64,000 nucleotides of DNA from Ascidiella aspersa (lineage: Eukaryota). The notes below the pieces were generated by a model, which saw only the letters and a list, made by a program, of their open reading frames with translations, searched no databases and was not told the origin of the DNA. Position numbers and translations under genes: made by a program. Numbering within the stretch: position 1 is the first letter of the stretch; each line of letters starts with the position of its first letter. The stretch lies in the NCBI GenBank assembly GCA_963924565.1, contig OZ004612.1:8866001-8930000 (forward strand), written 5' to 3'. Of the stretch, positions 13,385 through 56,692 are shown piece by piece.

Positions 13385-13465
13385 ATGGAAGTACATTCAA
13401 CTCTAAAGCATATTGCAAAAGGCAAGAGAGATGTGACTCTCCACAAGCAAGTGAAATACAAGTGA
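13385..13465 (+). CDS. Putative micropeptide/uORF MEVHSTLKHIAKGKRDVTLHKQVKYK* (26 aa)
   Basis: Kozak AACATGG; ends AAA TAC AAG TGA as in the paralogs. A weaker-context upstream ATG exists at 13339 in another frame. Confidence 0.45.
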   Translation: MEVHSTLKHIAKGKRDVTLHKQVKYK

Positions 13466-13571
13466 CCAGATCGCCTTTTTGTGTGGATTACTTTCCATTA
13501 TGAGATGATTCAATGTGACTGGAATTGAGTTACGAGGTCGACATTGACAAGGAGACTGTATTCAACTTCAG

Positions 13572-13824
13572 CGGGGTCAACGTACACCGAAGTACGGACG
13601 ATTTCGAGATACAATCAGGGATTGCCTAAACGCATGAGGTTTATCTCGAAACAGGCTCAAGCCAGGATCGGGCGCCTTCACCCAAAAAGGCCGGGATTCG
13701 AGCGAGCCTGCCACCGCCAGCAAGTTGTCAACGAAGCAGTCTACAGTTGAACTTGACCAGTTCTGCAACAGCAAAGTCTCCGGGATTCAAGCACTTGATG
13801 AGAGACATCACAGCTTTGCAGAAC
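13572..13824 (+). ncRNA. Conserved structured core, copy A
   Basis: 6 differences in 253 nt versus copy E by manual alignment; four hairpins. Confidence 0.6.
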
Positions 13825-16800
13825 ACACAAGTCAACGTTACAGGAATAAAGAGGATACCATCTTCTACAATCACCGCCTTGAATGAGAAAAGGGGGATTC
13901 AAAACAGTGCCAATGTGCATTGGACAATGGCCATTCAAAGAATGTGCCAACTTCGCAGAAACCAAGTTTCTGAGGTTTTGCCACGTTTCAACAACAATGT
14001 TGGTGGAATGAGCGTTGTTACGCATTTCTATATTGTATAAAAATATGTTATTCGTGTACTTAAGTGTATTTCGTGAACGACCTCGCTGTACATGTTGCCC
14101 ACACATGATTTTGTTTCGTTTTTGCCTTTTTACATTTCACAATATTTTTGCAATTAAAGAAAAATTGACCAAAAACACAAGTTTTCGTTTATCGAGTTTG
14201 AGCTGTTAAGAGTAGTACTTCCAAATAGGCAGGTTCAGTTCATACAAAACAGGTTTTTATAATATATTTCTGTCTTTTATAGGCGATAGAAAGTAAAAAT
14301 ATAACAGGTAACAACTTTATCAAAAGTATTTCACTTAATTGGTTTAGAAAAGAGTTGCCTGGTAACGGATGTTATGAAATGTTCAATTAGCTAGCAACCA
14401 TATTCCAAATTTTGTGTTTTATTGTCTAGTTAAGAGCACAACTTCAAATTAGGTATCGACCTGTAATTTGCCACTTAATAAGCTCCATCATTCAAATTAC
14501 AGGCTTTAAAATAATTGATTGACAACTGGCATTGACGTAGGCTGGGGTTATTAGAGCGTGACCGTATTCCGGCGTTTTGTTTAGGGTTAAACATCCTTGT
14601 TTGAATCCAGTGCTTGAGTTGTACAGGTGCCTAGAAATAAAGCTGAATGGCTTGAAATTTAGCTTATCGTACACCATAATGTACAGTTGTACACCAACTT
14701 ATAATAGGGTATATTAGACATGACGTTTAATTACTGCGAACTGTTAAAATGTAGATTTTGCGCAAGGTACGTTCGGCACCATTTTAACAGGCGAATCAAT
14801 TAAGAGTGCACAAAAGTCGTTGATAGTTCTCGGTAAACGAGATATTTAACACTATGCCGAAACTGATTTTACCTCTGGATTGAGCAATATTCGATTCCTT
14901 GTTAGTTATCGGTTCTTTTCCTCCATATAGGAAAGTTAAAAAATATGAAAAAAGAAAAAAGGCAAAAATAAGTAAACAAATTGTGCTTTAGATTGAAAGG
15001 AACAAGAAAAGAGAGTTAAGACACACTTTTGCTTTTCTATTAATTATTAGTTGAACTATTAATTAATTAAGATTTATATTTATTGATAAAGCATATTATT
15101 CTTAGGATTTACCCCACGTTTGTATAATTCATACTGCCGTATTCGTCTTTGTCCATATGATAGTAATTTTGTTTTCATTTTTCGAGTTTTGGCCACTATA
15201 TTTGTAAAACGAACCGAAATTTTATTAATTTAAGACCCTTCCTATAATTTCCTTTTATTAGAGCCTTGAATTTTCCCATGTAATGTGTTTCAACCTTGTT
15301 CACTTGATAAAAGCTCTTTGCGTGAAAGAACTGAAGCACCTAAAGGTGGCCGAAATAGTAAGTGCGAACAGAGCAATAGACGTAGCTTTGAAATTTTGCC
15401 AGTAATTCGAGAGCGCTTTTAGGCGGCCGCGGCGGCAGCGATCGCGTTTTAAGTCGACGAACGTGACCCAGAGAAAGGATAGAAATCTCGCGTCTGGGCC
15501 CGCCGGAAAATTGCGTTTGCGGCGGCGCTGAAGGCAGCAGCAAAATCAGCGCCCGGAAGCTTAAGACGGAAGAGGTTGCCTGCAGAAACAACACCCGAGG
15601 CGCGTCGCGCTGCCAGCCGGCAATTGTGGCTCAAAAAATAAACGCGTCGGTGCAAATTGGCCAGCAAAATGCACCGGACTCGGCAGTCAAAATGCAACCC
15701 ACAGTACGGACCGCATTCGGTACGGTTAGCGCTTTTGTAGAATGCCGTTCTCATCAGACCGAATTGATCCGAAAGTAGCTGGCCGTTTATCGTAATTAAC
15801 GCTCGTGTTTATGCCTGACCAGGACGCTTCTCACCACGCTACAATTGGATTAGAAACGGTGTATTGACCGCGCGCGTAACTGTGTCAACTGTGTATGCTA
15901 ATTTCGATGGGCGATTTCCTTCCACGCGGCTTGATACTCCAGACAGCGTTCCCACATGGAAATTTGCACCACGACGCAGCTGCCGAGTGTTACGCAAGCA
16001 ACCCAGCAAACCGCTTTGTTTATGTGTTAATTTGACTTGCAGTTTTTTTATGTGCTCTGCTTTTCAGTTGATATTTCAATTGTTGCCTATTCTAAACTGA
16101 GTGTTTCATCACAGAACCATCTGTTTGTTAACTGATGCTATCGTAAACGACTCATTAGGGCGTGTTGTTGTTGTTCGACTTGTTTATCACCTTATGGCTG
16201 TCGGAGTGGGCTGCAGCAGTGCGGCAATATGCTAATGAGACACATATGTGCATAGATCGAGCCTAATGTATGCAAATAATCGCGCCACGGAGCATTTTAG
16301 TTGGTGATCGAGCCTTTTAAGTTCTTAACTTTGATGGAGAAAAATGTCAAACATGTTAAAGTCTGCTTTTCGAAACTTGTTTGGTGATACGTGTCTTGGC
16401 AACGTCTTTGCAATCAACCATATTAAGCTGTAGAGAAACTGAAGATTTGTGGCCCAAAAACAAATAAAATGACTCTAGCCTAGTTGGGCTTCCTATAAAG
16501 GTATAGGTACTGTTGAAGGTTTTTGTATAGGCTACAATGAATTGTGGCTCAAAGTCACGTTGACTTTCAAGATCTTGGCCAAACGGATTCGTGCCGTCTT
16601 AGGACTTTCGTGAGAAATTTCAACACACGCTTATAAGTATCAAGAACAAACCAAACATCTCATCGTTACTTAACACCACTCCGTTAATTTAAAAACGCTG
16701 GCTCGTCAACTTAAGTAGTGGTCTTACGCACGAAGCAGTTAAAATCACTTGACTTTCGAAATACAAGTAACATTTTTCCGTGACTGGCTCAAAACTGCTG

Positions 16801-18099
16801 CCCAAGTGTCTTTGGTATATTAGTTAATCGCATTAAACGACGTTAGGAGTTTGCAATGATAGTGAATTACAATTTCTACCTTTACAAACTTTTCCAAATT
16901 ATTTATTCTTTTTTCTATCTTAGCACTAGTGGTAATAAGAATTCGCTTGAGCAACTTTGCTTATTTTTACACTTTGAAAAAATGCAGTTTATTATTTTTA
17001 ACTTTAAAAAATTCAACGTACAGCCTATATGGAAACCTTGTGTTTTGAAAAAAACATAAAAATAAATCTGTTTTGTGCTCCAACTAAGCATTCACCCCAA
17101 AAACAGCTCAGTTGACGGTCGCGGTTATTTGGCGGCCAAGCGGATGGGACTGGTGTGATTCACGCGCGCCAACGTTGCAATTCCCACGGCTGTAGGGTGT
17201 AATTTCGCCCATCGTGTTGTGTCTGCGGCAGCATGGGCGGGATTTTCGTTTGATGAACGAGCGTCCGCCGACCTTCACCCCAAAAGTGGAAAAGTTCGCG
17301 CCGAGGCCGGCGGCCCTGTGAACTCTAGGACCCGTGAATCAATCAACAGGCAGATCGCGCCGCCTCTTTGAAACCCGCCGTTTTTTGTGAGTAGCAGATC
17401 CCCTTTTTGTCGAAAGTCGCCGTGTAAATTTGACAGAGTGCGAAAAAATAGAGTAGATAAAGAAGGGAGCAAGGCCTTTGAAAATTGGCCAGGTGAAACG
17501 CGACCCACTGTAGACTTTTTATTGACATGACCTAACATTTCCAAGTTACCACTGGCGACGTGAACTATAAACCACTTTAAAGGCCTTTCTGACATTTCCA
17601 ATTGATTTTGCGGGTAGCCGCCACAATTTGTAGAAAATGGCCGTGTAATTTTACAAGGTGCGGAATAAAAGGTGTGGATAAACACATGAAAAAGTTCTTT
17701 TTAAATCCAAACTGTTACTGACTGTAAAGCCCAGTTGACATTGCCAAACCTTGGCGGAGGCCATGTCATACGCTAAATGCGCGACGCACCCTGAAAATAC
17801 TAAATAAACGGACCGGCATCGCTGTGAACTCTCGGAGCCCTTGTCTGTGAATTGGTCAACGCCGGTTCACGCCGCCTTGAACAAAGTAAATGAGTCGTTT
17901 CTCACGTCTCAACTTGGATTTCAAACATATTTTACCACTGTTGAGTCTAACGAGTTAGCCTGGTTTTATATGCCATACAGTTTCATACCGACAACAATCT
18001 TTAGCGAGCCGTAGATGCCCAACAGCCCGGAAAGCGATATTATCTGCCGAGCATTATTGCCGGCGTATAGGGATTTCAGGAGTTTGGCGTATAATTTTA

Positions 18100-19750
18100 A
18101 AAACAAAATATACATTTGACGTTAATCGTTGACAGCCCTAAGTTAAGCAATGCTATGCATGTTGAAATGTGTTTACCACTGTAACGCAGCCTAAAAACTC
18201 TCTGTTCGTAAGTCGGGTAAAGGTCAGACTCCGCTTGTCGCTTTGAATGTTTTTTCGTCGTGTATTTGTAGTATCGGTACTCGACCGGTGTCAATACAAA
18301 ACAATTGTTTACCTTGAAATGAAAATTTCATAAAAATCTTTTATAACAGTTAAAATTTCAACTTAGCCATGTAACGCCAAGGCAGATTTGGATGTGCTTG
18401 TTAAAATGTAATGACCACTGTAACGCAGCCTAAAAACGCCCAGTTCCTAACTCGGTTAAAGGTCAGACTCCACTTGTCGCCTTATGATGTTTTTTCGCCA
18501 TGTATTTCGCCGCACGAACACAAAAGAACGCCTTATTGATTTTGCCGAACCCTCTTTCCCTTAACGTTGTCTTACGTTCTGGTCACGCGCTCTACGACCA
18601 GCGTGAACCATGTCGAACACGCCACTTGGAAATTTAAAGAATTAACCTGTGCGTCAGTGGCAGAATACACGCTAGTCAGTTACATATAGGGATCGGTAAG
18701 GCGTACGTGTATCGTCATTATGAGAACGGCAAGAGCATACTTTTCAAATTATGTCATGGCGTTCCTGTGTCGTTTTGCATCGCAACGTTTAAAGCGAAAT
18801 TACGTTTTCTGTCGTTGACGTTTTTAACGCATTGTACAATGTTAGGTTTTCACACTCTTAATTATATGCCGATAATATTAGATCAGAGCTGATACACGAT
18901 GCCAGATTGTAGTATCGGTACTTGACCGGTAACAATCCAAAAAGAAAACAACAAAGTTATTTGAGTATATTGGCCACTTATTATGATCCAAAGCAACGTT
19001 TTCTACCTTTATATGAAAATTTCACAAAAAGTCTTTTATTAACAGTTAAAATTTCAACTTAGCTGTGTAACGCCAAGGCAGATTTGGATGTGCTTGTTGA
19101 AAAGTGATGACCAAAGTAACGCAGCCTAAAAACGCCCTGCCCATAAGTCGGTTAAAGGTCAGACTGCACTTGTCGCTTTGAATGTTTTTTCGCCATGTAT
19201 TTCACCGCAAAAGAACGCCTTATTGACTTTGCCGAACCCTCTTTCCCTTAACGTTGTCTTACGTTCTGGTCACGCGCTCTACGACCAGCGTGGTCCATGT
19301 CGAACACGCCACTTGGAAATTTAAAGAAGTAACCTGTGCGTCAGTGGTGGAATACACGCTAGTCAGTTATATATACGGATCGCTAAGACGTACGTGTATC
19401 GTCATTATGAGAACGGCATGCGCATACTTTTTAAATTATGTCATGGCGTTCCTGTGTCGTTTTGCATCGCAACGTTTAAAGCGAAATTACGTTTTCTGGC
19501 GTTGACGTTTTGAGCGCGTTGTACGATGTTGGGTTTCTACACTCTTAACTATATGTCTTATAATATTGATTTGGAGCTAATACCCGATGCCAAATTGCAG
19601 TATCGGCACTCATCCGGTGCCAATCGAAATAATACCACTTAGGATCCTATACTCCACGTTTTCTACCATTAAACGGAAATTGATCAAAAATTCTTAAATT
19701 TATTGTTTAAATTATAAGTTAGCTGTGTAACGCCAATGCAAATTTTGGCT
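18100..19750. repeat. Tandem duplication, ~640-690-bp unit (2 full + 2 partial)
   Basis: Unit anchor gYagtatcgg at 18268, 18909 and 19597; long near-identical stretches, e.g. 18547-18850 versus 19234-19540. Confidence 0.9.
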
Positions 19751-22080: not shown

Positions 22081-22245
22081 TATTGCTTGAAAAAAAATAG
22101 ACCAAAACCTTTTTAAAAATAGACCAAAACGAGTTTATTGCTTGAATAAAATAGATCAAAACTTGAGTTTATTCCTTGATAAAAATAGAACAAAACCTGA
22201 GGTTATTTGTTGAAAAAAATGGACAAAAACTTGAGTTTATTACAG
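22081..22245. repeat. Minisatellite, ~34-bp unit, ~5 degenerate copies
   Basis: tattgcttgaaaaaaatagaccaaaacttgagtt-like units. Confidence 0.85.
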
Positions 22246-23049: not shown

Positions 23050-23947
23050 CTGATGGTCATAACATTGACTCTGAATGCAAACGGTGTAATCGATTATGTG
23101 ACATTTGTTAATCGACACGAATAAATATGTATTTTTCTGAAATATCACAAGTCACATTTACAAAGCAGATTTAGTTGTTTAACGAATTACAGTTCTACTG
23201 TTTTTGTGTTTTGGAATTTTATCTATATCTATATCTGTAAAGTTACCATATTTTTTTCTGCAGAAGACTACATGCCAATCGAAACGTCGGCGGCATTAAT
23301 ACACGTTTAATCAGAAAAAAAAAACATTTTTAATTGACAAAACAATCTTATTTTCTCCCAAATATACTTCTAGATGAGTGTCTTTTTTTACGTTGCAATT
23401 CCAACCGCATCAATGAAGTGTTATCTTCGTTGTGTTCGTTGCAAATGTCGTCGTTTGTTGTTTTGTGATGTGATGTCTCTCATCAAGTGCTCGAATCCTA
23501 GAGACTATTCCTGAAAAATTCGACACAACGGGCAGCTTTTGTGATCACTTTCTGGCGGTGGCAGGCTCGTTCGAATCCCGGCCTTGTTTGGATAAAAGCG
23601 ACCGATCCTGACTTGAGCCTGTTTCGAGATAAACCTCATGCGTTTAAGCAATCCCTGAATTTATCTGAAAATCGTTTGTATATCCACATACGTTGACCCC
23701 GCTAGAAATGTGGTGTCGCTATAAGGATTTGTCCCTTCTTCTATTGAAAGGTCACAAGGTTCTTCTGCATCTGAATATGCGACCAAGTTGTCCTTTTGAT
23801 CACAAGTCACTTTTCCACATTTAAATGTGGTATTTATCAAGTTGTGTCCGGGCCAACCCTAAATGTAGCTCTAGCGAAAACGATTTCAGCCTATCGCTTC
23901 GCAATTAGCGTTTAGACAAAGAAAACAGTCGTGTGGTCTCTTATATA
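23050..23947 (-). other. Paralogous transcription unit B (most diverged; no intact KYK ORF)
   Basis: TATATAAG at 23947 on -, AAAAGTGA remnant at ~23810, TTTCTAG then diverged core at 23701-23470, AU-rich tail. Confidence 0.6.
23470..23701 (-). ncRNA. Conserved structured core, copy B (diverged)
   Basis: A ~45-nt stretch is identical to E; hairpins are retained with wobble and compensatory changes. Confidence 0.55.
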
Positions 23948-30876: not shown

Positions 30877-31013
30877 AAAATTGCCACAAGGTCGTTCACG
30901 ATTTTGCCGCGCCTCGCCTCTAATTGAGCGCCTTGATGAGCGCTTGCTTGGTGAGAAGGCAGGACGACAATGACCGCGCTGGGCTTTCATTTGAGGGCTT
31001 CTGACGCACGCTG
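30877..31013 (+). repeat. Duplicated ~137-bp element, copy 2, ~1.59 kb upstream of the unit C TATA
   Basis: Near-identical to 11700-11836. Confidence 0.9.
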
Positions 31014-32468: not shown

Positions 32469-32503
32469 TATATAAACGAACGCCCAGCCGTTAATGGTCA
32501 CTT
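32469..32503 (+). promoter_or_regulatory. TATA box + initiator, unit C
   Basis: TATATAAA at 32469; Inr TCACTT with A at 32500. Confidence 0.75.
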
Positions 32504-32557: not shown

Positions 32558-32629
32558 ATGGAAGCGCGAATGAAATCGCACTGCAGCAAGATGCTGACGG
32601 GAAACGTCAAGCGAGAAAAGTACAAGTGA
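32558..32629 (+). CDS. Putative micropeptide/uORF MEARMKSHCSKMLTGNVKREKYK* (23 aa)
   Basis: First ATG after the predicted TSS, Kozak ACGATGG, ends AAG TAC AAG TGA. Confidence 0.5.
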   Translation: MEARMKSHCSKMLTGNVKREKYK

Positions 32630-32747: not shown

Positions 32748-33000
32748 CGGGGTCAACGTATACCCAAATACGGACGATTTCGAGATACAACCAGGGATTG
32801 CTTAAACGCATGAGGTTTATATCGAAACAGGCTCAAGCCAGGATCGGGCGCCTTCACCCAAAAAGGCCGGAATTCTAGCGAGCCTGCCACCGCCAGCAAG
32901 TTGTCAACGAAGCAGTCTACAGTTGAACTTGACCAGTTCTGCAACAGCAAAGTCTCGGGGATTCAAGCACTTGATGAGAGACACCACAGCTTTGCAAAAC
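32748..33000 (+). ncRNA. Conserved structured core, copy C
   Basis: 5 differences in 253 nt versus copy E by manual alignment. Confidence 0.6.
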
Positions 33001-34134
33001 ATCCAAGTCAACTTCTAAGAACAAACGACGAAAAGTACAACTGCCCACTCAGCCAACGTGAGCTGACTAATGGGCGCAAGTTGTAAAGAAAACGTTCTAC
33101 AACATGGGTTAGCGTTTCCGCTGCCTTTGTATTTCCAGCGATGCCTGCTCTTACCTACTCGATATCTCTAAGGAGAAATTGAGTGTTTATGTATATATAC
33201 TACATTGTTATTACTTATTAGTTTGGCGCAACACTGTGTCTTATGCTTTTTGCCAATTTATCGTGTCGTTATTTTGTAACGCGTTGATCATGTGTTTCTT
33301 TGACATGTTATTTTTCGAAACAAGGTTACAAAATGAATTCAATCTTTTCTGATTTATGAAACAGATTTAGGAAAAAAGTTAGAAATGTAAAACAAGACAG
33401 GAAAGCAGTTATTCGGTATTATGACAAGAAAAATGCAAAACAAAAAAATCTTTGGTAACCATATAGGTTCAGTAACAAATCGGTTACTTCATTGAACAAA
33501 ATATATAGTCTAAAATACAATTTAGTGTTTGAAATATATCGAGGTCAATTAAACAGACAGATATTTTTTTTTTGTTCTCAGCCTCTAGAATTCCGCGGTC
33601 AAAATTGTGCTTTTTGAGTGCGGGGGTGTTGTGGCAAAAACTAACGGGCTCTACTATAAAAGGACACAAAAACGTAAGGGCACTTATACCTGTTGTAGCG
33701 CCCGTGTGGGCCGAGCCAATAAAGGGAAAGATTTGATGTGTCATACATATTTCCAAGGCATGTCAGTATCACATCAGGGATATGTGACAGGGCCTAAATC
33801 AATTCACAGACCAAAGGGTTTGGTGCGCGCCTTTTGACAGGTTGGGCCTGCCTGTAATTTTGGCCGATACCGTTTGAGGTTTGGCGCTTCCGAATGGCTT
33901 TCATCTCGATAGTATATCTGTGATCGACAAATTGTCTCTTTCGTGGACATAATGGCACAGGCCAATTGCAACACATTGGCGACTGACAGTTGACGGTTTG
34001 ATGTGTTGATTTAACCGCCTTCTAAAACTTTCTAAAATCTTGCTTGAAAGGCTGGTCACAATCAGTTTATGTTTTTGGGAATGCGGAAGGCAATATAATC
34101 GAATTTTATGTATACCATTTTAATTCGTTTAAAA

Positions 34135-41648: not shown

Positions 41649-44017
41649 GAGGCACCCACGTTGGTTGATCTGATTGCGAGCGATTTTGCGAATTTAAACG
41701 TGACACTTAAAAACAAAGAACGTGAGTGGTTTACCAGGGTTCCAAGGTTGCATAGCGTGCTGTGCGGAACACGTGTTATCAACAGCCGTTAACAGGTGGT
41801 CAAAGAAGGGTGCTGTCATACTTTAAAAAACTATAGCACAGATTTCATGAAAATTTGACATAGATGCCACCGTTTTACAACCCTATTACGTGGCCATGTT
41901 GGCCTGTCTTATATTGTCGACGATTTCCTCTTAATTGCAGTTTTATCGTTTTTAAGTGTTATCCAAACGTTACAAAAACAAATTATTTTGTCAGTTTTAT
42001 GTGACCTAAATACTCTCGCAACTGTGAGAACTGCGTTTAACACAGCCAAACCACGTCGAGGTATATGGCGATTTTTCAATCCAAGATTTCTTATTTTGTA
42101 GGCAAGGTGATTTACCCGACAATTGCCAGCTTCAACAGGTTACACCCAGACGACGTAGGCGAATATGTTGCTGTTCAAACGCAGAACGGGCTTGTGAAGA
42201 AGTGCGACAGGCATTTTCTTTGCGTCCCAGGCGAGCGATTTCAAAGCTGAACTGAACTTGGGGTCACTCGACCTCACGGCGGTACATCAGACGCGGTTTT
42301 CACGAGAACACTCGGGCACGCCGCGCTTTGATATAACTCGTATCTTTATACTGCTGTCGCCAAACTCGTTTTTATTAATAAAATGTGTTTTCTTCATTAA
42401 CATATAGAACTGTGGGCTGCTAAACTAAGACGCCAACGACGAAAAAGAAAGAAAAGGTTGACAAATAAAGGCCAAGAGAAAGAAACGATTGAAAATTAAA
42501 GGCCTTGGTTTTAAATAGTCCATCCGTTGCCCATTCCGGTTTAGCTTTTGATCAATACCGTTATACAAAAGCCGGATGCACTCATTTAGACTTGTGATGC
42601 ATTGCCGGATTACTGAAAGGTCACCAGAATTGATGGTGGTTAAATTTAGCGCGAAACAATGGCGCTTTTAATTGCCTGACAAATGATGTCTGGCGTTATA
42701 TAACTGTTTTTTTTTTATTAATTAAAAACAACCGCCACTGACTAACAAGGTGGCAATTTTAGGAAAGGCAAAGAAAGCAGTCGCCATACAGTATCATAAT
42801 GCCATTTATTTTTACTTTCCAATAGATTTATTTATACTTTAATCCGTGGAGCTTCGCACCTTACACCTGCACAAGCTTAAAACACATCCAGCGCCAGTCG
42901 TTGACATTTCAAACGGAAGGCGTCACGGTCTGCCGATTACAGTCGAATTCGTCAAACGACAAGACAGCTTCCAATTTGCGCGGGACAAAGTTCAATCGCA
43001 AAGCTGCACCGGGCAAAATTGCACGTCTTAAAGGTGCGTAAGTCATAATAAAGCTTCCGCCTGTCCGCTCGTACAGACGCCTTAAGTTCAGGCCGATGTT
43101 TGACCGTCTTGTAGCCTAATAACCACCTTCAGCATGTTTCCAGGCACCGACGTTAGTAAGTTGTAACCATCAACCCGGAGCCGTAAAGGCAATTACAGTG
43201 GCGCCAGCTAATAGCCCAACCAGCGCGCCTAATTGCAGCATCCGTCAGCGATCGTGGCCAGTTTTGCACCTCGGTCAAGCTGCTGCTTTGCCTGACAAAT
43301 GGCGAATCGAGCGCCGGGAAAACGTGTTCGCCGTGGCTCGTTTTTACGTAAGGGGAAGTGCTTCTTGCGTGGCACGCGTTCGCCGTTTACGCCCACTCTA
43401 CAAACAAACAAGAACGATTGTCCACCGATGACCATACTAAGACGCGAGCTTTGTTTGGGCGAGTTGGTTTATTGACGATGTCTGACGTAAAGCAAAGGGC
43501 GATCGTGAAAGTTGACAAGGAAGCCTGTCAACGAAGGACGAGCGAAGTGGCAAAAACAAGAAAGGCGCTGAAACAAAGAAGCGCAAATGTGCAATGCGAA
43601 GGAAAAATAAACTTGAGGTGGAATTTAATGCATTTACTTGCAAAATAAAACGCGCAACTTAGCGGAGGCCAACAAAGAAATAAAACACAAAATGTGACAT
43701 CCTTTGGGAGACACAGAGCTTGGTCGACGATGTCAGTTCACTTGAAGCTATATAGTTGAGGTCGTCTGATATGCGGAATACTCGGCGATTCATCACAGTG
43801 TAGAACTGGCTTTTTGAAAGAAAACAAAACTTTAAGTAAAAAAATTGAAATAAATGCATAATATTTAAGCCACTACATTTTATCATTGTTAATTCCGCGT
43901 AACCTAATTACAAAATATTAGTTAAATACATTTTTATCATGTTATACACCTTTAGACCAAACCAAATAAAGCGTTAATTACCTTAAAACTCTCTTTTTTG
44001 AGCATATAGAGACATCG

Positions 44018-44399
44018 TTGACCTGTATGTTTTGCAAAGCTGTGGTGTCTCTCATCCAGTGCTTGAATCCTCGAGACTTTGAAGAACTTTTCCTTTACAA
44101 CTTGCATCCAGTCGTCAGCTCACGTTGGCTGAGTGGGCAGTTGTACATTTTCGTCGTTTATTCTTTGAAGTTGACTTGTATGTTTTGCAAAGCTGTGGTG
44201 TCTCTCATCAAGTGCGTGAATCCCAGAGACTTTGCTGTTGCAGAACTGGTGAAGTTCAACTGTAGACTGCGTCTTGACAACTTGCTGGCGGTGGCAGGCT
44301 TGCTCGAGGCTTGAGCCTGTTTCGAGATAAACCTCATGCGTTTAAGCAATCCCTGATTGTATCTCGAAATCGTCCGTACTTTGATATACGCCGACCCCG
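44018..44399 (-). ncRNA. Conserved structured core, copy D
   Basis: Core homology; the tip of hairpin 2 is deleted and part of hairpin 4 is duplicated at ~44018-44080. Confidence 0.55.
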
Positions 44400-44500: not shown

Positions 44501-44581
44501 TCACTTATACTTTGCTTGTAAAGTTTTACCCCGTGCGGGTCCTGAATGTAGGTCCGCACACATTGTTTGACAGGGTACCAT
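44501..44581 (-). CDS. Putative micropeptide/uORF MVPCQTMCADLHSGPARGKTLQAKYK* (26 aa)
   Basis: First ATG after the predicted TSS, Kozak AAGATGG, ends AAG TAT AAG TGA. Confidence 0.5.
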   Translation of the reverse strand: MVPCQTMCADLHSGPARGKTLQAKYK

Positions 44582-45287
44582 CTTAACACACGGGGCCACG
44601 TGCGTCGAATCGACAAAGCGGATGTGAACGCGGCAGCCCAAAGTCGTGCTTTTATATAGGGCGAGCCTATAGCAACCGCAGACGGGCAGCTCAAAACAAA
44701 GCAACATATCGTCGCCCTTTCGACAGCGAGGCCCTACCACCGGTGGGATTTCCACAACTTTTCCGGACGAAGAGTTGAGGTTTGACAGCCGGTTTTCGGT
44801 TTGGAAAACGTCGCGATGAAAGTGGTTGAAGTAAGATATCGAATTCTTCGGTGTTTTGCACTTAGACGTTCACTGTTATTGGTACGTTACAATTTTGAAA
44901 ATCTCTACCATGTTTTGATGTTTTATCCTATTTATTCCACGTGTCAGACCTGGGTAAACCTTTCAGAATTATTGTTGCCAATAGCAACCAAGTAATTGTT
45001 TTTCGGGTAAACAAAGCTTTTTTGAGCTACAGTGAAAATCTGGTATGAGGTTAACTTTAAGTCACCAGCTCAATTATTGTAACTAATCGCACAAAATATA
45101 CCTTAGTTCATAATATTTTAGTTGATTAAAATTGAATTGGTCACCAGCACTAGTTCATCCTATATATTGTCTGGTGTCGAGGTAGACGTGCTAAAAAGTA
45201 AATAACCATTTTTACTGCAAGATTATATAACGACGCATAGCAGGTTGTTTGCTTACGCTTATGTAACAATCCAAGTTTTATGTACAG

Positions 45288-49020: not shown

Positions 49021-49248
49021 GAACTTTACCCAAGTCATACTACGTCACAGCTATGTGCTGATTAAATCCTTAATTATTCTTTGAATTCATGAATCACTTA
49101 ATCTCCGATAAGGACTCCCAAAAATAAGCAAGTAAAAATAAAACACTGGCACGCAGAACATCGTTCAATTCCACTGAACAGTAAAATTGCTAAAAGCGTA
49201 TATCATAAAGGTCTTACTGATGACGTAGAATGACTTGGATAAAAGTTC
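49021..49248. repeat. ~27-bp imperfect inverted repeat with ~173-bp spacer
   Basis: gaactttacccaagtcatactacgtca versus tgacgtagaatgacttggataaaagttc. Confidence 0.9.
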
Positions 49249-50111
49249 GTAATTGACGACTTCTGTTTTTAGCAATATTTCTCTTTGAACAGTGCTTTCT
49301 ATCGCCGTGCGTTCAGAATTAATAAGATGGCAGTTTCAATCTAAACGTAAAAAAGATACACCCGGTGACATTTCAAAACTGGGCCTGCAATGTAAAATAA
49401 ATTGGTTTAAAATTGTTCAATACAGCCGAAATTATACAATTTTCGTCCGCAAATATCTCGGGTGTTTAGCTCCGCCTGTTGTATTCTTTTTTTAGAATTG
49501 TGTCACTGTGGGCGTGCAAACAATGTGACTTCCGCACAGAGGATAACAATACGACTAATCGCTGTAAACTTAGCATTGCCGCTGGCATATACACATCTCA
49601 TTTACATTAAAAACAAAGATTCATATTTTTATATCTACTGACCAAGATAAGGAGCGCCGAAAATACAAAAGAGTTATCACGCCGAGCGCCCGAAATCGGA
49701 CGGCCAGGTTAAGAACACGTTTCCGTGTCTCGGTTTAAAACATTGGAAGTGCTACTTTGAGCAAACCGACGGCGCTCAGTTCGCCCGACGTCTCAAACAA
49801 ATTTACATCTGTCAGAATTCTAGAGGCGCTTGCCTTATGTCGGCTCGACACCCCGGGTGGCATTTAATGACTAATCTCAGTCGGCGGCGGCGACGGGCTT
49901 GAGGACTTTCTCGTTTCCCTTCCGGAGTGTGGAAACGGAAGCAGACTGCCAGTGCGCTTCCTCAGCTCCAAAACGGCCGGATCCCTTTTTTTTAAAGCCC
50001 AAATTTTTGTGTTAGTTTCGTTTAAAACAGTCTGACATGCGAATGCACAGAATATTTCAAAGCCCGCCTGTGGAAAACGCCTGCAATAAAATGCTAAAAA
50101 GCAAATCAGGA

Positions 50112-50717
50112 TCAAACAAATGTGCGATTGTTTTTCAGGCCACTGTAAAAAAACTGGCCCAAAATATGCCCGAAAACAAACTTACCGACAACACACTGAA
50201 AGCGTAACAGACTTGCCTTGAGACATCGCGCGCTCTCGGGAAAGTTTTTCCTCCAATGCAAGCAAAACTTTCTCTGTTCGCGGGTTTGGGGTAAACATTG
50301 AGATGATGCCAGCGCACGGCCACTGACGTAGGTTGCTTCGTTACGGGATGTTTGGCCGACGACTGTATTGCTGGAAACCCGCGTAGAGAGGCCTTGCCTT
50401 GCCATCACAGACAAAGGTAAACTGACAACGGAAACGGCGGCGCCTGGTGCGCTAACTTGGACAGGGATGCCAACGTCAGTCGTCCTGCATTTAAAGTAAG
50501 ACCGATTTAGGCTCGGACCACTGTATACCTTGTGGCTTTTCTTAGACGTTCGGCTTTCCCTTTGTGAGACATTCGGATCGATTTGTTGGCACAGTTTCGA
50601 AAACTCGTCCCGAAATACCTTGAACTCAAGTGGTATTTTCGATGCGATTTCCGTCTTATCAATCCCATAAATAATAATAATCGTTACTTGATATTCCCTT
50701 TGGTCCACAATTTCCTG
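50112..50717 (-). CDS. Longest ORF in the window (~200 codons); possible exon of an unknown protein, possibly spurious
   Basis: Preceded on - by a TTTTCAG acceptor-like site. No recognisable domain, and the length is only marginally above chance. Confidence 0.2.
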   Translation of the reverse strand, partial: QEIVDQREYQVTIIIIYGIDKTEIASKIPLEFKVFRDEFSKLCQQIDPNVSQRESRTSKKSHKVYSGPSLNRSYFKCRTTDVGIPVQVSAPGAAVSVVSLPLSVMARQGLSTRVSSNTVVGQTSRNEATYVSGRALASSQCLPQTREQRKFCLHWRKNFPESARCLKASLLRFQCVVGKFVFGHILGQFFYSGLKNNRTFV

Positions 50718-52120
50718 CTGAAAATACTAGATTAAAAAAATCCTTTGTTTTTGCACTGCAAATACATGCTATATCATTGTTTGTTTATCTGTGGCCAAAA
50801 TTAAAAACAATGTGATCTTTTTATTATACAAAATACGACACATTCGTTGCAGCTTTAATTATGTAAACATGTTAAAGCTCACTGACACTACGCTGAGAAC
50901 ATTTAGGAAAAGTGGCATTATGCAAAATATATCGAGGGATAATTTATTTGACTCCGGGCATATAGTTACAACGGTCATATCTCATTTCGACCAACTCTTA
51001 TTTGATTGTTATGGTCCTAGCTTTATCAGATGAACAAAATTGCGAAATTATAAATAATTTTCTACTGATATTTACACAAACAATAAAGTTTGCATGTTTT
51101 AATTTTTCGATGTGCTTTGACAAAACACTCGTTACGGTGCAATGCTTGTCGGTAAACATTGAAAGTCCTGGCGAGAAAACTTAACGCGATGGGCAAATTT
51201 AAATAGAAAATTTGCACAGAAAATAAAAACGGCAAACTATGTTTTGCGTACAATTTCACGGCAGTGACGACTGTTGGCCAATTTTCGCCAACCACATCAC
51301 ACGTCGCGCTCAGCGACATCGACAGAAAAGCTATTTTCAGGGAAAGTGTTTTTGTTAGCGCAAGCGACCCATTTAATCGATGGAACGGAATTTAAAGCAG
51401 GGCTTCTTTAAAAATAACGTCCAAACGCAGTTGCAGCGCTTAAGTGGATGGCTTTTGCAGCGAAGCAACGCCGCTTATTGTCACAACAACTTCGCAAGCC
51501 AAATAAACTACAGAGGTTTGTTATGGTTTGCCCATGTCGGGGCATAACTTTGCCGCGCACCGCAAATTGGCATTTGCAGAAATACCGCAGACGCCGCGCT
51601 CAGAGTATGAAAACAAAACATTGCCAATGAGCCTTTCGTAAGCCGAAAGAGCATCATTAAGGCCTTGGCGATTGAGGCCCGCGTGTTTGCTTGGGCGAAT
51701 CGGTCGTGTTTATCCAATTTCGCTGCTTTTTTGCCAAATTGTGGCCGGGATTGACGCACGTCGCCAGTTGGAAATGCAAACGAGGCCTTGAATTTACCGG
51801 AAACCCTCTCTGCGTAGAAGGCCTTTCCGCAAAAGAAGACTTAGATAAGTCGTCCTATTCTCCGCGCCTACTGAGTAGGAGTGAACATGTGCGAATTGCG
51901 ATTTGATAGGGCGCGATTGTTTAAACCAACATTGGCCTTGGTCATTACCAGTGTGTAGCTAATCATTACCCAATACTGTGCATTGACGTAAAGCAATGTA
52001 AAGTAACCTAGGGTATAGTCAAAATTATAAAGGCATTACACTGTCATGAAGTTGCTGTGTCTCGGCGAGGCATATTTGAGCAAGAAATAAAAGTTGAGCA
52101 AACACGTGTACCGATTAGAC

Positions 52121-52455
52121 TAGGGATTCTTAAACTGGGGTTCATGGACCCCTTGGGGGTTCGTGAAATTGTTTTAGGGGTCCGTGTAAGCCTAGGTAAA
52201 AGATTAGTGTTTATTTGAGAAGTAATCAAATTAAAAAAAAATAGTTTAATTAAAAATAAAACATTATTGCACCGAATGTATAAAGACTTTATTTCACTTT
52301 CACATTTTTGTACCGAAACATCAGATTTCTAAAGCTCATTTGTATTGTGAAGTAAATTTATGACGTCATCTCTAAAAATTTTTTCCCCTAATGTGGTCCA
52401 TGCGAAGCTAAGAATTTTTTTAGGGTCTGCGGTAAAAAAAGTTTAAGAACCCCTG
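52121..52455. mobile_element. hAT (Charlie-like) MITE
   Basis: TIR tAGGGaTTCTTAAACT / AGTTTAAGAACCCCTG; TSD gattagac/gaatagac. Confidence 0.85.
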
Positions 52456-55400
52456 GAATAGACAAAGCATTTCGTCACGATTTTTGAACAATGGCGGACG
52501 GCCTGTCTATTGTAAAGCAGTCAAAGCACATACAATCAAAAACAAAAGTTGGACAGGGTATGTTTCACCAAATTTAGAGCGTCGCTAAAACAAAAGCCTT
52601 TCGCGTCTGTTCCGTGATGTTTGTAGATCGCAAACGCATCTATAGGTATTCTAGTCGTGCCAATATTTATAGCATGCCATAGGCATCTAAGCAGTACTCT
52701 ATGTCCGTATACTGGAGGACGTCGGTTTAATAGGCAGACGTCCAATCAACAGTCGAGTCACGAAGCTGCCTTGACGACCTATACAGTCTCGAGCCTTTAG
52801 ACAGCGCCCATATATTGTGCTGTGAACCACGGTGTATCACTGCATACGCCTTACGTGAACGTCTGGACTTCATACGCCGCATTTAGACACAGTCATACCG
52901 GTCGGCCCCAAAAGTAAAAGTGGTAATAGTTTTCCACGTCAAAGGGCGAACTGCGACGAACCCCGATATTGCCCTTTGCCCCACAAGACGAAGGGTGACT
53001 GTACGTTCTATTCCAATCCATGCAGAGTTGTGATTTCACTTGCGCGCCGCTGAATAATGAATGTCCTACGTACACTCGTCTAGTCGACGTAAAAACAGGT
53101 AACCTTCTATAACCCACAGAATTATTTTACCTTGATTCAAGTTTTACTATGTGAATTGTTACGAGGCCAACTGATTGATGCCATCTGTTAAAAATTACAA
53201 AGTTCGCTTTTATATCTTTTTGGCCAATATATCGCTTTTACATTTTTTATTTAGTTTATATTTTGCTTGGGTTCTCTTTTACGCACTACAGAAAATGATA
53301 TTTTGTAAGGAGATAAATATTACTATTTGGTAACTCACAACGTCCTAATTCAAACTTGAATTTACTTAAAAAAAGGTCGCATAATACTCAGTGGGCACCA
53401 GGCCTTTTTTCCAATGTTATACATGCTGCTCTCATAATTGAATTAATTAATTTAGCTGCACGATTCACTCTTTTTCATTAAATATATGTGACTTTTAAAC
53501 ACAACAAATACTTATCTGATCAGCTCTAGTATAGCGCACGTGTTAAGCGAAGGTCAAATTAATTCTTTGGGATTCAATAGCATTCCAGTAGGGCAAAGAC
53601 GTCACGCGCATTAACTAAATTGCCACGCTTTTGTGTAAAAAATGCCACGGATCATCTACAATCGGTCACATTTGATGACCGCGCGTGTGTGCATGTAATG
53701 TAGCGTTGCGGAATGCTCAACGGTTGGCGTAAATACGTGACACCGGTCCCAATGGTATGACGTCGATACGACGGTATACGTTAGCATTGGTATTTACCGA
53801 CCCTACCGTGCACCAACCACAGAACGAATACACTTTTTAATTATACAGGAGCCAATAAACGATAACATGTTTACGCTGAGCCAAAAATGCCGCACGCCGC
53901 GAAGCTTTTAGGTGGTCAAAAATAAAAAGCGTCGAATAGATTCAGCCTACGTACGCGGCAATCGATTTGACCGAAATAAGTGTACGGCGCGACCCCTGGC
54001 AAATTGAAGCGACCTGAAAATTTCGATCAGATTAATAACTGCACTAAGTAATTCGATAGGGAAGGCATTTCTCCTAGAGTAAAAAATCCCGGCACCGTGT
54101 GGTATTTTATTGTTATATAATGTTAGTTTAATGAACATCATTTGCCCATTTTATGACTATTCATTTGTTTTGCGTCATTGTGATTAAATAAACCGAATTA
54201 TTTTTTTTTAAAGTTGAATTATTATTTACAGATTCTTTTCTCAAACAATTGTTTTTAAAAAGCTTTAATTTAAAGTCTACAGTCTACTGTGCGGATTGCG
54301 CCATCCCAAAAATACGATCACTTTCCCCTTATTATAAAACAAGTGCGATTTCATAGTCTCTAATGTTTTAGCAAATTTCTACAAGTTGACAGGATACACT
54401 CAGTATAGCCTTGGAAACCGTTCGGTGATTGTTTGTTTATTTTCGCCGCGGCGCCTATTCCTACGTAGTAAGCGGGAACAAAAAGCGCCCCAACAAATCG
54501 CCGTTTATTTGCGCCCGGAATCGACTGGTTATTTAGCGCTCAGGCTGACGCGCGGCAAATTTCGCGACGAAATTAATCATAAAAAAAACGACGACGGGGC
54601 AAACTTTCGCCGCGCGTACCCCAGGCGCTGCGAAAGGCTCGAGGGGCACCGCTGTCAATCGCGCAGGCCTCGCAGGGGCCGTGACGTAGGTGGTCGGCGG
54701 CGTGACGTCAAGGGTCGCGTGGCGGCGTGTTCGATTGATAAGCGGGCCGGCTTAGGGCGAGCGCTGTTGGCTGGCTTGCTGTGACGACCGCCGGGACTGT
54801 GTTGAAGAAAACACTGGGAAAGCGTGCGCGACGAATGCCGAAAGGAAAAGCGGCACCTGCGTTTGCCAAATGCCGCGAGATAAAGCGAACCCGGAACTAC
54901 GCAGATAAAAAAAGATCTGGCTTTGAATGTAAATCGGCCGGCACCCTTTTTCTACTTGTTTACCGGCTTTTTACCCAATCCCAATGGCCACTTCAAGGCC
55001 TGCTTGTACAGTTCCAAGCTCTCTTTCTTTCATCGCCTGTTAAAACGGCCATAGAGACCAGCCAAAGGCCTCGATACGCGTTTTGACGGGTTTGGCGTCA
55101 GCACAATAAGCTGACGACTGACGGGTGACGTGGAAACAACATGTTTTCTAGTCGCCGGTTTCGCAAGTTTGCGCGTTTGCTGCAGGCTTGGCATTTTCAC
55201 TTTCGCTTGCCATGTAGAAGTGTTGCTGCAAGTCACGGCAGAAGAAAACATTTAGCACTTTAAAGCCCTGTTTTTTTTTGTCGCGTAGATTTCATTACGG
55301 AAGGAAAACTATCGCCATTTCTAATAAATGATTCACGTAGCCGTAATCCTAATTCAAGATCCCCTGTTTTCCCTAATGAACAATGTGTTGTCTTTGGGTG

Positions 55401-56617
55401 GTGTTCTGGTGCCTTTGACGCTTTGGGAATTTACGCACTATCGCGCGAAAAATCACTTAGGCTGCTTGTTTACTTTCCAAGTTAGAAAATTCGCATAAAT
55501 TCCTGCACAATAACACTTTCGACGAAAAGCGTGCCCCTTATTCGAAAAACAAAACAAAGCAAAGCAAATGTGTAATCAAGATAACTTGGAAGTGAGTTTA
55601 TTTCAAGAAACAACCTCTTTTACAATTAATCGTACATTATATTTATCATCGGAAACATATTTTATAACTTAAAAGCTTGTTAGCGTATATACGGAGCACG
55701 TACCCACTTAACGAGATTTAAACCTAAATAACGCTAAATATAAATATAAATGGCCTATCTTTTTAAACCAGGCTGTTTTCGACGATTATTTTTGCGAACG
55801 GTCTAAGTCGCCAACAGTGTGTCAAATACGTTCATTGTGAGCCGTGCAGCCCATACGCAGTAGTAGGCCCTAATGTGCTTGCTGTGCATTAAACTGGGGT
55901 TAAGGCGGGTTTACCTAACTAAGAATACGCGGATAATTTCCGCACTCCGCTATTGAAATGTTCTGCCCAAAACTTCAAAGTACTGCGTGTGCACCCAGTT
56001 GAACCAGAACCACGGCACGCTAATTGCGTTAATATTAAAATCATGAACCGGCGTCAACCGACCGATTCCTTACATTTTTACTGGGATAATATTACCGGAA
56101 CCTTTGATGAAACGTTGCCGGAAAATGGCATTTGGCCCAACCTTTTGAATGTATCATAAAGCTTGATAGCTTGCGTGCGTACTTTAATTTACCAGGTAGT
56201 CTATATCCAGGGCATTTCCTAGGTAGGCCTAATCGGCATGTATCGGTCATCCAGTTCCACATTAAAACTTTCCAGTGCATTTTTGATACTGCGAAATGGG
56301 CAACTTTCCCCAAAATTGTCGCCGGAGCAAATATTGTGCGCAGAAGTCACAAGTTTTTGGCCGGCTGTAAATCTGGCGGAAATTTACCGTTGATTTACTG
56401 GAGACTTTCTGCTGTACTGAAGCCTAGCAGCTAGTAAGGCTAGACGGCGTCACGTGCCTGAAAAGCCCCGTCTCGTTCTGTTTTTCTCTTTGCGTTGCGC
56501 ATCGAAGAGCTGGCCATATATAAGCCCGCGCACAGCGCCAGTTCGGTTATACAGCTCTTGTTGCTGCTGCTACGTGTACGTACGCCGAATATGTTTTTGT
56601 ATGTTCAGCGTCCAATT

Positions 56618-56692
56618 ATGGATTTACCGACAATATGTTTTGTTGCCGCGGGATGCAACGAAATTCAAGCTTCCAAGCAAAAGTACAAGTGA
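56618..56692 (+). CDS. Putative micropeptide/uORF MDLPTICFVAAGCNEIQASKQKYK* (24 aa; an in-frame ATG at 56591 gives 33 aa)
   Basis: Kozak ATTATGG; ends AAG TAC AAG TGA. Confidence 0.5.
   Translation: MDLPTICFVAAGCNEIQASKQKYK

What the first reader, a model, noticed from the sequence alone, without database searches (positions are those of the whole stretch)
13385..56692. Conserved 23-26 aa micro-ORFs ending KYK-TGA despite unalignable N-termini
Seen: units A (13385-13465), C (32558-32629), D (44581-44501) and E (56618-56692) each have an ANNATGG start in frame, without stops, with (AAA/AAG)(TAC/TAT)AAG TGA. The variation in those codons is synonymous, and ORF length is kept despite indels. 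Established: C-terminal-only conservation is typical of regulatory ribosome-stalling uORFs. Inference: a translated uORF or micropeptide, possibly coupling translation to the downstream RNA structure. Caveat: AAAAGTACAA recurs in the 3' extension (e.g. ~33031), so the motif could act at the nucleotide level.
Basis: partly seen in the sequence, partly recalled or inferred. Interest (0 to 1): 0.8.

Follow-up and report, generated by a model that had tools for sequence, protein, structure and literature searches.

The report
Short reading frames heading sea-squirt RNAs
Four of five copies of a small, locally duplicated RNA gene keep a 23-26-codon reading frame near their 5' end that always ends Lys-Tyr-Lys-stop; it looks kept by selection, but nobody has yet shown that it is translated.

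Summary
AARTAYAAGTGA occurs 4 times in the window (0.05 expected). Each copy closes an ANNATGG-started frame of 26, 23, 26 and 24 codons.

The frames sit in a five-copy family found only in this window of a 308.6-Mb genome. Each unit has a TATA box, a variable leader, the short frame, a spacer and a ~290-nt conserved non-coding core.

RNA reads show a + strand RNA of about 0.8 kb that is colinear with the DNA. It contains the frame, and no splice removes the stop.

The frame interiors align no better than random. Keeping the frame in 4 of 5 units has P of about 1e-4 against shuffles, and about 2e-3 to 9e-3 under my harshest null. The motif's two variable sites are both synonymous, and D replaced a lost ATG in frame.

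Against: no conserved main ORF follows, so it is not a classical uORF. Only the peptide ends are conserved. Unit B lacks the frame. Stop triplets are scarce in all leader frames. I found no orthologues or ribosome data.

Best reading (0.45): a translated 5' short ORF acting in cis.

The parts
13282..13289 (+). Unit A TATA box (TATAAAAG)
   Evidence: aligned with the TATA boxes of the other units
13385..13465 (+). Unit A short ORF, 26 aa, MEVHSTLKHIAKGKRDVTLHKQVKYK*, start context AACATGG. A weak-context out-of-frame AUG lies upstream at 13339.
13572..13860 (+). Unit A conserved non-coding core
23440..23947 (-). Unit B: TATA box at 23947-23940, leader without the motif or a comparable ORF, and the most diverged core (about 80% identity), 23701-23440
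32469..32476 (+). Unit C TATA box (TATATAAA)
32558..32629 (+). Unit C short ORF, 23 aa, MEARMKSHCSKMLTGNVKREKYK*. All 3 leader ATGs are in this frame.
32748..33040 (+). Unit C conserved core; a second AAAAGTACAA lies at 33031-33040
44651..44658 (-). Unit D TATA box (TATATAAA)
44501..44581 (-). Unit D short ORF, 26 aa, MVPCQTMCADLHSGPARGKTLQAKYK*. The position homologous to the A/C/E start is GCG, and in-frame ATGs lie 2 and 8 codons upstream of it.
44140..44399 (-). Unit D core, with a 35-nt internal deletion and a repeat spaced 153 nt downstream
56517..56524 (+). Unit E TATA box (TATATAAG)
56618..56692 (+). Unit E short ORF, 24 aa, MDLPTICFVAAGCNEIQASKQKYK*. An in-frame AUG at 56591 would give 33 aa.
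   Evidence: covered by RNA reads
56796..57090 (+). Unit E conserved core; a second AAAAGTACAA lies at 57079-57088
56590..57402 (+). Span of unit E covered by RNA reads: continuous, one strand, no joint inside. ATTAAA lies at 57365-57370. The 5' end is only approximate; the read ramp fits a start about 30-50 nt after the TATA box.

Best explanation
Each intact unit (A, C, D, E) is a small TATA-driven Pol II gene. It makes an unspliced RNA of about 0.8 kb. The 5'-proximal 23-26-codon ORF is kept by selection because ribosomes translate it. Only its ends are constrained: M-[D/E]-aliphatic at the start and K-x-K-Y-K-UGA(C/U) at the end. The roughly 700 nt that follow are non-coding and carry a ~290-nt conserved, hairpin-rich core. 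I infer, but have not shown, that what matters is translation and termination at KYK-UGA, not a diffusible peptide. A short, possibly slow-terminating frame would set how the rest of the RNA is handled: its stability, its ribosome load or its access to partners. Shown: the frames, their retention, the transcript, its strand and the lack of splicing. Inferred: translation, pausing and the cis effect.
For: 1. Motif and frames: 4 of 4 as described.
2. The transcript is real and includes the frame. Depth is 7.4 over 56617-56747, 12.5 in the first core bin and 6.8-8.5 in the three bins after it. All reads lie on one strand, and no joint crosses 56690-56796. Five reads of unit C also run from its spacer into the core.
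3. Frame retention: P(ATG-ORF of 20 or more codons ending at the fixed TGA) is 0.087-0.124 per unit, product 1.4e-4. The result is robust to the assumed start site and length threshold: products run from 2.3e-5 to 2.5e-4.
4. The interiors are random-like in 6 of 6 pairs, while the spacer is still alignable in 5 of 6 pairs.
5. ATG-to-TGA lengths are 78, 69 and 72 nt, and 54 nt from D's homologous codon. All are multiples of 3. D lost the shared ATG and has two in-frame replacements.
6. Both variable motif sites are synonymous, P 0.012-0.05.
7. Second codons are GAA/GAA/GAC/GAT and third codons GTA/GCG/CTA/TTA, so the changes are wobble or conservative.
8. 8 of 13 leader ATGs are in this frame, P 0.035.
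9. The one copy without the frame (B) also has the most diverged core.
Against: There are no ribosome, peptide or orthologue data. Stop triplets are scarce in the leaders in all frames: 7 observed against 21.8 expected. By frame the counts are KYK frame 0 against 7.3, +1 frame 2 against 7.1, and +2 frame 5 against 7.35. Shuffle P values are therefore too optimistic. Using the stop density of the other two frames, the product is 2.2e-3, and the binomial for at least 4 of 5 units is 8.9e-3. Inside the ORF, frame-specific depletion is only P = 0.0165. Only three residues are fixed at the C-terminus, which is short for a tunnel-dependent arrest peptide. The upstream CAAGCRA block is read in a different frame in D than in A, C and E. 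AAAAGTACAA recurs outside any shared frame. A and E carry out-of-frame upstream or overlapping AUGs. No conserved downstream ORF exists to be regulated.
Confidence: 0.45

Rival explanations
1. Nucleotide-level motif. AARTAYAAGTGA, with CAAGCRA before it, is a binding site on the RNA or DNA for a protein or a small RNA. The frames are by-products of a stop-poor leader plus a motif that happens to contain TGA.
For: AAAAGTACAA recurs in the 3' part of C and E, and with one inserted T in D, outside any shared ORF. CAAGCRA is conserved as nucleotides, but D reads it in another frame. Leaders are depleted of stop triplets in all frames, 7 against 21.8. The KYK frame stays open 88, 44, 122 and 76 codons, running through the TATA box in A, D and E (C's blocking stop falls just after its TATA). 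So open frames are cheap here. AAGTGAC is also present in the leader of B.
Against: Even the harshest null gives 2.2e-3 for four in-frame, stop-free frames. It does not explain the conserved ATGGA start island, the ANNATGG context in 4 of 4 units, D's in-frame start-codon replacement, or why both variable motif sites are wobble positions. No consistent RNA partner was predicted. The 3' copy is absent from A and B.
Confidence: 0.25
2. Micropeptide genes. The product is a family of 23-26-aa basic peptides with fixed ends and a freely or diversifyingly evolving middle. The conserved core is then a 3' UTR element for localisation or stability.
For: All the evidence for a selected ORF applies here too. 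Both termini are conserved, not only the C-terminus, and net charge is +1 to +5. The ORF interior has diverged more than the neighbouring spacer.
Against: The peptides have no signal peptide or transmembrane segment by eye and no shared interior residues. A functional peptide with about 18 unconstrained residues out of 24 is unusual. The strongest conservation in the gene is in the non-coding core.
Confidence: 0.15
3. Splice signal. CAA|GTGAY is a 5' splice site and CTTTCAG|CGGGG a cis or SL trans-splice acceptor. On this reading KYK-TGA is an exon end, and the stop is removed from the mature RNA.
For: GT follows the motif's CAA in all four units, and a pyrimidine-rich ..CAG or ..TAG precedes the core in all five.
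Against: RNA reads run straight through. Depth over 56617-56747 (7.4) is as high as in three of the four following core bins (6.8-8.5), although the core also collects reads from units A and C. No joint is listed across 56690-56796. Five reads of unit C cross its spacer-core border unspliced. The donor matches the usual consensus poorly (recalled consensus, by eye).
Confidence: 0.05
4. Chance or hitch-hiking. An ancestral accidental frame has survived in four copies without any selection.
For: There are only four observations. The leaders are stop-poor. The similarity pattern is mosaic: A-E share the 5' UTR (z 5.5) and C-E the spacer (z 6.8). This shows exchange between copies, so the copies are not fully independent.
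Against: The interiors are random-like in all 6 pairs, so the frames were not simply inherited intact. P is 1.4e-4 to 9e-3 depending on the null. D's start codon turned over in frame.
Confidence: 0.1

Closest known systems
Conserved-peptide uORFs and arrest peptides, e.g. Arabidopsis AT1G70780 CPuORF (passages read in PMC5587730); AdoMetDC MAGDIS, CMV gp48 uORF2 and the fungal arginine attenuator peptide are recalled, not checked
   Same: A short ORF near the 5' end whose conservation is concentrated at the C-terminus and stop. In PMC5587730 (passages read), N-terminal truncation of AT1G70780 left arrest intact, codons 39-50 were sufficient, and the ribosome stalls at termination.
   Different: No conserved main ORF follows here. 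Only three C-terminal residues are fixed, against about 12 in that example. The N-terminal M-[D/E]-aliphatic is also kept. Arrest is untested.
Short ORFs carried by RNAs otherwise classed as long non-coding, and polycistronic sORF genes such as tarsal-less/polished rice (recalled)
   Same: A tiny ORF on a polyadenylation-signal-bearing Pol II transcript with no long ORF. Paralogous ORFs share a short terminal motif.
   Different: Here there is one ORF per transcript, in five separate paralogous genes. The middle of the peptide is unconstrained. Most of the conservation lies in a downstream structured RNA segment.
Plant TAS3-type precursors, where a short ORF ends next to a small-RNA site and a ribosome positioned there affects processing (recalled)
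   Same: An ORF stop codon embedded in a nucleotide motif on a non-coding RNA. The motif also recurs downstream, as the two miR390 sites do.
   Different: No small RNA, target site or processing product has been shown here. This is an animal lineage. The comparison is only an analogy.
Ordinary 5' splice site plus acceptor, or an ascidian SL trans-splice acceptor
   Same: GT follows the motif's CAA, and CTTTCAG lies before the core.
   Different: RNA reads are colinear with the genome across both sites.

Membership tests
Conserved-peptide uORF / arrest-peptide uORF | Lies in the 5' leader of an mRNA, upstream of a conserved main protein-coding ORF | tested here: not met
   The only ORF shared downstream starts at an invariant ATG (MRFISKQAQ...). 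It ends at 22 aa in C (GAG to TAG), shifts frame in B (+1 nt) and in D (-35 nt), and is 38 aa in A and E. No other ORF is shared.
Conserved-peptide uORF / arrest-peptide uORF | Peptide conserved at the amino-acid level among homologues, with coding-type variation | tested here: inconclusive
   Only M-[D/E]-[V/A/L] and K-x-KYK are shared. Both variable motif sites are synonymous (P 0.012-0.05). There are four paralogues and no orthologues.
Conserved-peptide uORF / arrest-peptide uORF | Peptide-dependent ribosome arrest | not testable with these tools
   Needs toeprinting, in vitro translation or Ribo-seq.
Translated short ORF on a long non-coding-type RNA | The ORF lies on a real mature transcript, on the sense strand | tested here: met
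   depth is 7.4 over 56617-56747, all reads are on one strand, and there is no joint. Letters specific to units A and C are also seen in the core: A in 3 of 13 and 4 of 11 reads, C in 5 of 14, 4 of 12 and 4 of 9.
Translated short ORF on a long non-coding-type RNA | Frame kept among homologues beyond chance | tested here: met
   4 of 5 units keep it. The product P is 1.4e-4 against shuffles and 2.2e-3 under the conservative null, and the binomial for at least 4 of 5 is 8.9e-3.
Translated short ORF on a long non-coding-type RNA | Ribosome footprints or a detected peptide | not testable with these tools
   No Ribo-seq or proteomics was reachable.
Intron (cis-spliced) or outron (SL trans-spliced) | RNA reads join donor to acceptor, or the leader is depleted relative to the downstream exon | tested here: not met
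   no joint across 56690-56796. Leader depth is 7.4 against 6.8-12.5 in a core that pools three units. Only about 6 in 100 of one run was read, so a minor isoform is not excluded.
Any Rfam family | Covariance-model match at the gathering score | tested here: not met
   0 matches in the whole window. Over 56500-57420 only 4 matches reached E of 5 or less, all 13-15 bits and far below their cut-offs.

The most novel reading that the evidence does not exclude
These are bifunctional RNAs. The short frame delivers a ribosome to a fixed termination site, KYK-UGA, which is itself a recognition motif repeated downstream. Translation would then gate the processing, decay or partner binding of the ultraconserved structured core, an animal counterpart of ribosome-positioned processing of non-coding precursors. 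Alternatively, the family encodes peptides with fixed ends and a hypervariable middle under diversifying selection.
Probability: 0.1. Interest if true: 0.8.

Novelty: new variant of a known kind. Interest (0 to 1): 0.45.

Why it matters
If the frames are translated, this is a compact natural test case. It offers four paralogous RNAs with the same promoter type, the same structured core and the same peptide ends, but unrelated peptide interiors. That is close to a ready-made mutagenesis series for asking whether translation of a 5' short ORF controls a non-coding RNA. It also flags an apparently unannotated, expressed, lineage-restricted RNA gene family in a tunicate. If the frames are not translated, the 12-nt motif is still a conserved element of unknown reader.

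Tried and rejected
1. Splice donor and acceptor. This was my first reading. I rejected it on the RNA reads.

2. SL trans-splice acceptor at the core border. It is not supported, because leader and core depths are equal. 17 loose-end rows were not shown, so a minor form is not excluded.

3. A longer coding exon. The KYK frame is open 88, 44, 122 and 76 codons upstream, through the TATA box in A, D and E. However, other frames are also long-open there. By eye, the homologous upstream nucleotides are read in different frames in A and E. No RNA reads lie upstream of about 56590.

4. The motif pairing with the core. Predicted partners differ: the spacer in A, the extreme 5' end in C and D, and mostly unpaired in E.

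5. The core as a protein. It is frame-broken, and a word search with its 60-aa open frame found no candidate.

6. Known RNA families: none.

7. More family members. The core was found only at the five loci. The pattern TATA-gap-motif gave 14 genome hits against 18 for the reversed control, and only the 4 in this window belong to the family. The neighbouring promoter unit beyond the window end (L017) has no motif.

8. Orthologues. There were 0 matches for two core patterns in metagenome contigs and 0 in viral contigs. No collection of animal genomes was on hand.

9. NF-kB-like sites upstream of the TATA boxes, seen by eye. The consensus scans hit none of the promoters beyond one loose match at 56460, so I dropped the idea.

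10. Paper searches. 'ascidian' + 'small open reading frame' + 'noncoding RNA' gave 3 papers, none on such a family by title or abstract. I did not search further, so I do not claim that it is unpublished. Supplements were not consulted.

11. The poly(A)-signal list printed had wrong offsets. I redid it.
Full report
**Observation.**
- AARTAYAAGTGA has 4 exact matches in the 64-kb window, both strands. The expectation is 0.05, and 0 of 100 shuffles reached 4.
- Each match closes an ATG-started frame: A 13385-13465 (26 aa), C 32558-32629 (23 aa), D 44581-44501 (26 aa, - strand) and E 56618-56692 (24 aa).
- The start contexts are AACATGG, ACGATGG, AAGATGG and ATTATGG.
- The only differences inside the three last codons are AAA for AAG in A and TAT for TAC in D. 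Both are synonymous.
- AAAAGTACAA recurs at 33031 and 57079. It has 6 matches in the window against 0.49 expected. Two of the six are the ORF ends of C and E, and two lie in AT-rich DNA outside the units.

**What the frames sit in.** The conserved block downstream of the frames occurs at five places in a 308.6-Mb, 75-contig genome, all inside this window. The units are A, C and E on the + strand and B and D on the - strand.
- The alignment shows one plan for every unit: a TATA box (TATAWAAG-like), then a variable leader of about 115-140 nt, then the motif.
- After the motif comes a spacer of 101-118 nt with a weak TGGATTA island. Then comes (C)TTTCAG|CGGGGTC, opening a ~290-nt core that is 81-98% identical among A, C, D and E and about 80% in B.
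- Pairwise alignment against shuffles separates the segments:

| Segment | Result |
|---|---|
| ORF interiors | random-like in 6 of 6 pairs (z -0.6 to 1.6) |
| Spacer | still homologous in 5 of 6 pairs (z 2.2-6.8) |
| 5' UTR | similar only in A-E (z 5.5) |
| Core | z 45-73 |

- So the copies are old and mosaic, and only a few islands outside the core have survived. Those islands are the TATA box, ATGGA at the ORF start (A, C, E), CAAGCRA...AARTAYAAGTGA at the ORF end, and TGGATTA.
- Two of the islands are exactly the borders of the frame.
- Unit B has the TATA box and core but lacks the motif. Its longest leader ORFs are 6 and 9 codons.
I did not verify this properly. The only check was one exon-sized match to glycoside hydrolase family 6 at 28.1 bits, against a cut-off of 27. 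That fits a tunicate only by recalled knowledge.

**RNA evidence.** One RNA run of the same species label (X4, raw paired reads) and one DNA-contig run (X1) were laid on 55700-59600.
- About 6 in 100 of X4 was read, and 83 reads were laid. Some of these fall on a repeat at 57665-57795.
- Over unit E the depth by bin is:

| Bin | Depth |
|---|---|
| before 56486 | 0 |
| 56486-56616 | 0.58 |
| 56617-56747 | 7.4 |
| 56748-56878 | 12.5 |
| 56879-57009 | 6.78 |
| 57010-57140 | 7.78 |
| 57141-57271 | 8.53 |
| 57272-57402 | 3.18 |
| after 57402 | 0 |

- All of this depth is in the 'first mate on -' column, whereas the repeat shows both orientations. In the usual stranded protocol this means a + strand RNA, the strand of the ORF. 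That step rests on the library convention and is an inference.
- No joint is listed across 56690-56796. The listing threshold is 3 reads.
- Five reads have a loose end before 56777 whose letters match the spacer of unit C, apart from one missing G (by eye). Unit C is therefore also read straight from spacer into core.
- Unit-specific letters in the core show that A (3 of 13 and 4 of 11 reads), C (5 of 14, 4 of 12 and 4 of 9) and E are all expressed.
- Two reads carry a 150-nt 'goes back' joint that matches unit D's internal duplication. This is weak evidence that D is expressed too.
- The rise in depth fits a start some 30-50 nt after the TATA box (inference).
- The fall in depth fits the only ATTAAA after the core, at 57365-57370.
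- The units therefore make unspliced RNAs of about 0.8 kb, and the short frame is a stable part of them. This removes my first idea, and that of sibling note s1-791349, that CAA|GTGA is a splice donor whose use would delete the stop.

**Is the frame more than chance?** I ran several tests.
- Dinucleotide shuffles. I shuffled each leader upstream of the fixed KYK-TGA. The chance of an ATG-started frame of 20 or more codons ending at that TGA is 0.087-0.124 per unit, and the product is 1.4e-4.
- Mononucleotide shuffles. I used three assumed start sites and three length thresholds. Products run from 2.3e-5 to 2.5e-4, and the binomial for at least 4 of 5 units runs from 1.1e-4 to 1.1e-3.
- These values are too optimistic, because the leaders are poor in stop triplets in every frame. 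There are 7 observed against 21.8 expected. By frame the counts are KYK frame 0 against 7.3, +1 frame 2 against 7.1, and +2 frame 5 against 7.35.
- Part of that depletion comes from a pyrimidine- and CTG-rich 5' UTR being mixed with an A-rich ORF in the shuffle.
- Restricted to the ORF interior, the KYK frame has 0 stops against 3.73 expected (P = 0.0165). The other frames have 1 against 3.43 and 4 against 3.44.
- Harshest null. I took the stop density from the other two frames (7 per 336 codons) and a 1-in-3 chance of being in frame. The product is 2.2e-3, and the binomial for at least 4 of 5 units is 8.9e-3.

Further points in favour:
- ATG-to-TGA distances are 78, 69 and 72 nt, and 54 nt from D's homologous codon. 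All are multiples of three.
- D has GCG where A, C and E have ATG, and it carries in-frame ATGs 2 and 8 codons upstream.
- 8 of 13 leader ATGs are in the KYK frame (P = 0.035).
- Codon 2 is GAA, GAA, GAC (D's homologous codon) and GAT. Codon 3 is GTA, GCG, CTA and TTA. The peptides therefore share M-[D/E]-[V/A/L] with wobble or conservative changes.
- Two random substitutions in the 12-nt motif would both be synonymous with P 0.012-0.05.
- The frame's AUG is the first in the presumed transcript in C and D. In E it is preceded by an in-frame AUG. In A it is second, after a weak-context out-of-frame AUG.

**Evidence against translation-level selection.**
- I have no ribosome or peptide data and no orthologues.
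- Only KYK is fixed at the C-terminus.
- D reads the CAAGCRA block in a different frame from A, C and E.
- The motif's first ten bases recur downstream outside any shared frame.
- A and E have overlapping out-of-frame ORFs of 54 and 34 codons.
- The KYK frame stays open for 88, 44, 122 and 76 codons upstream, through the TATA box in A, D and E (C's blocking stop falls just after its TATA), as do other frames. Open frames are therefore cheap in this DNA.

**What lies downstream.** Nothing that a uORF could regulate.
- The only ORF shared by all units starts at an invariant ATG in the core (MRFISKQAQ...). It stops after 22 aa in C, shifts frame after a 1-nt insertion in B and a 35-nt deletion in D, and is 38 aa in A and E.
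- The core's open frame finds no protein relative by word search.
- RNAalifold predicts several hairpins in the core: 76 pairs, of which 4 have a double change that keeps the pair. This agrees with sibling note s1-790945.
- No Rfam family matches.
- The motif has no consistent predicted pairing partner: the spacer in A, the extreme 5' end in C and D, and mostly unpaired in E. Coupling by base pairing is therefore unsupported.

**Mechanism and rivals.** My best reading (0.45) is a translated 5' short ORF that acts in cis. What is selected is an AUG in good context, an open frame of about 24 codons and termination at K-Y-K-UGA followed by C or U. From recalled knowledge, UGA followed by C is a poor termination context.
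- A short, perhaps slowly terminating frame would govern the fate of the non-coding remainder. Translation, pausing and the cis effect are all inferences.
- The rivals are: a nucleotide-level motif with incidental frames (0.25); true micropeptide genes with a conserved 3' UTR (0.15); chance survival (0.10); and a splice signal (0.05).
- That B, the only copy without the frame, also has the most diverged core fits the view that the frame belongs to the functional unit. It is a single observation.

**Comparison with known systems.** It works most like conserved-peptide uORFs that stall at termination.
- In PMC5587730 (passages read), N-terminal truncation of the AT1G70780 CPuORF left arrest intact, codons 39-50 sufficed, and the ribosome stalls with the stop codon in the A site.
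- It is not a member of that class, because the defining main ORF is absent (tested, not met).
- It fits better as a short ORF on an otherwise non-coding RNA. For that class, two of three defining features were met here and the third, ribosome or peptide evidence, could not be tested.
- The other papers I saw only as search listings.
- The comparisons with tarsal-less, TAS3, MAGDIS, CMV uORF2 and the arginine attenuator peptide are recalled, not checked.

**Limits.**
- There are only four paralogues, which are not fully independent.
- One RNA run was sampled at about 6%, and one unit was laid.
- Transcript ends are inferred from coarse depth bins.
- No other animal genomes were reachable.
- I did not establish that the family is undescribed in print. 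Only the search bears on that.

Noticed in passing
window 11724-11818 and 30902-30996: A 95-nt block, 95% identical, sits at the same distance (spacings 19178 and 19176 nt) upstream of units A and C. The duplicated segment is therefore larger than the transcript, or the block is a shared upstream element. The same observation is in sibling note s1-791187.
   Followed up: partly
window leaders of units A, C, D, E (TATA+30 to motif): Stop triplets are depleted in all three frames: 7 observed against 21.8 expected from dinucleotide shuffles. The KYK frame stays open 88, 44, 122 and 76 codons upstream, through the TATA box in A, D and E. This is not explained by coding, because A and E read the homologous upstream bases in different frames.
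   Followed up: partly
window 13634, 23639 (-), 32810, 44337 (-), 56858: An invariant ATG in the core opens MRFISKQAQ... in all five units. The rest of the frame differs (38, 44, 22, 59 and 38 aa) through a stop, a +1 insertion and a -35 deletion. It is probably RNA-level conservation rather than a second peptide.
   Followed up: partly
window 57665-57926, with a copy at 63046-63174: A high-copy repeat. Word depth reaches 15,872 in the DNA contigs, against about 56-62 in the flanks, and it is transcribed on both strands.
   Followed up: no
window 56996-57145 (as laid); unit D 44017-44234: A 'goes back 150' joint with four extra letters appears in one DNA contig (depth 53) and 2 RNA reads. It matches unit D's internal duplication with 153-nt spacing, cross-mapped onto E. 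This hints that D is expressed too.
   Followed up: partly
window 18100-19745: Tandem repeats of about 690 bp (families D2-D4) lie between units A and B.
   Followed up: no
window 56602 and 56747: Allelic differences between the assembly and other individuals. T>C at 56602 is in DNA contig X1. T>C at 56747 is in X1 and in 7 of 13 RNA reads. No difference was reported inside the 75-nt frame of E, but at about 1% divergence fewer than one is expected.
   Followed up: no
G000:C5:19613851-19614090: An exon-sized match to glycoside hydrolase family 6 (28.1 bits, cut-off 27).
   Followed up: no
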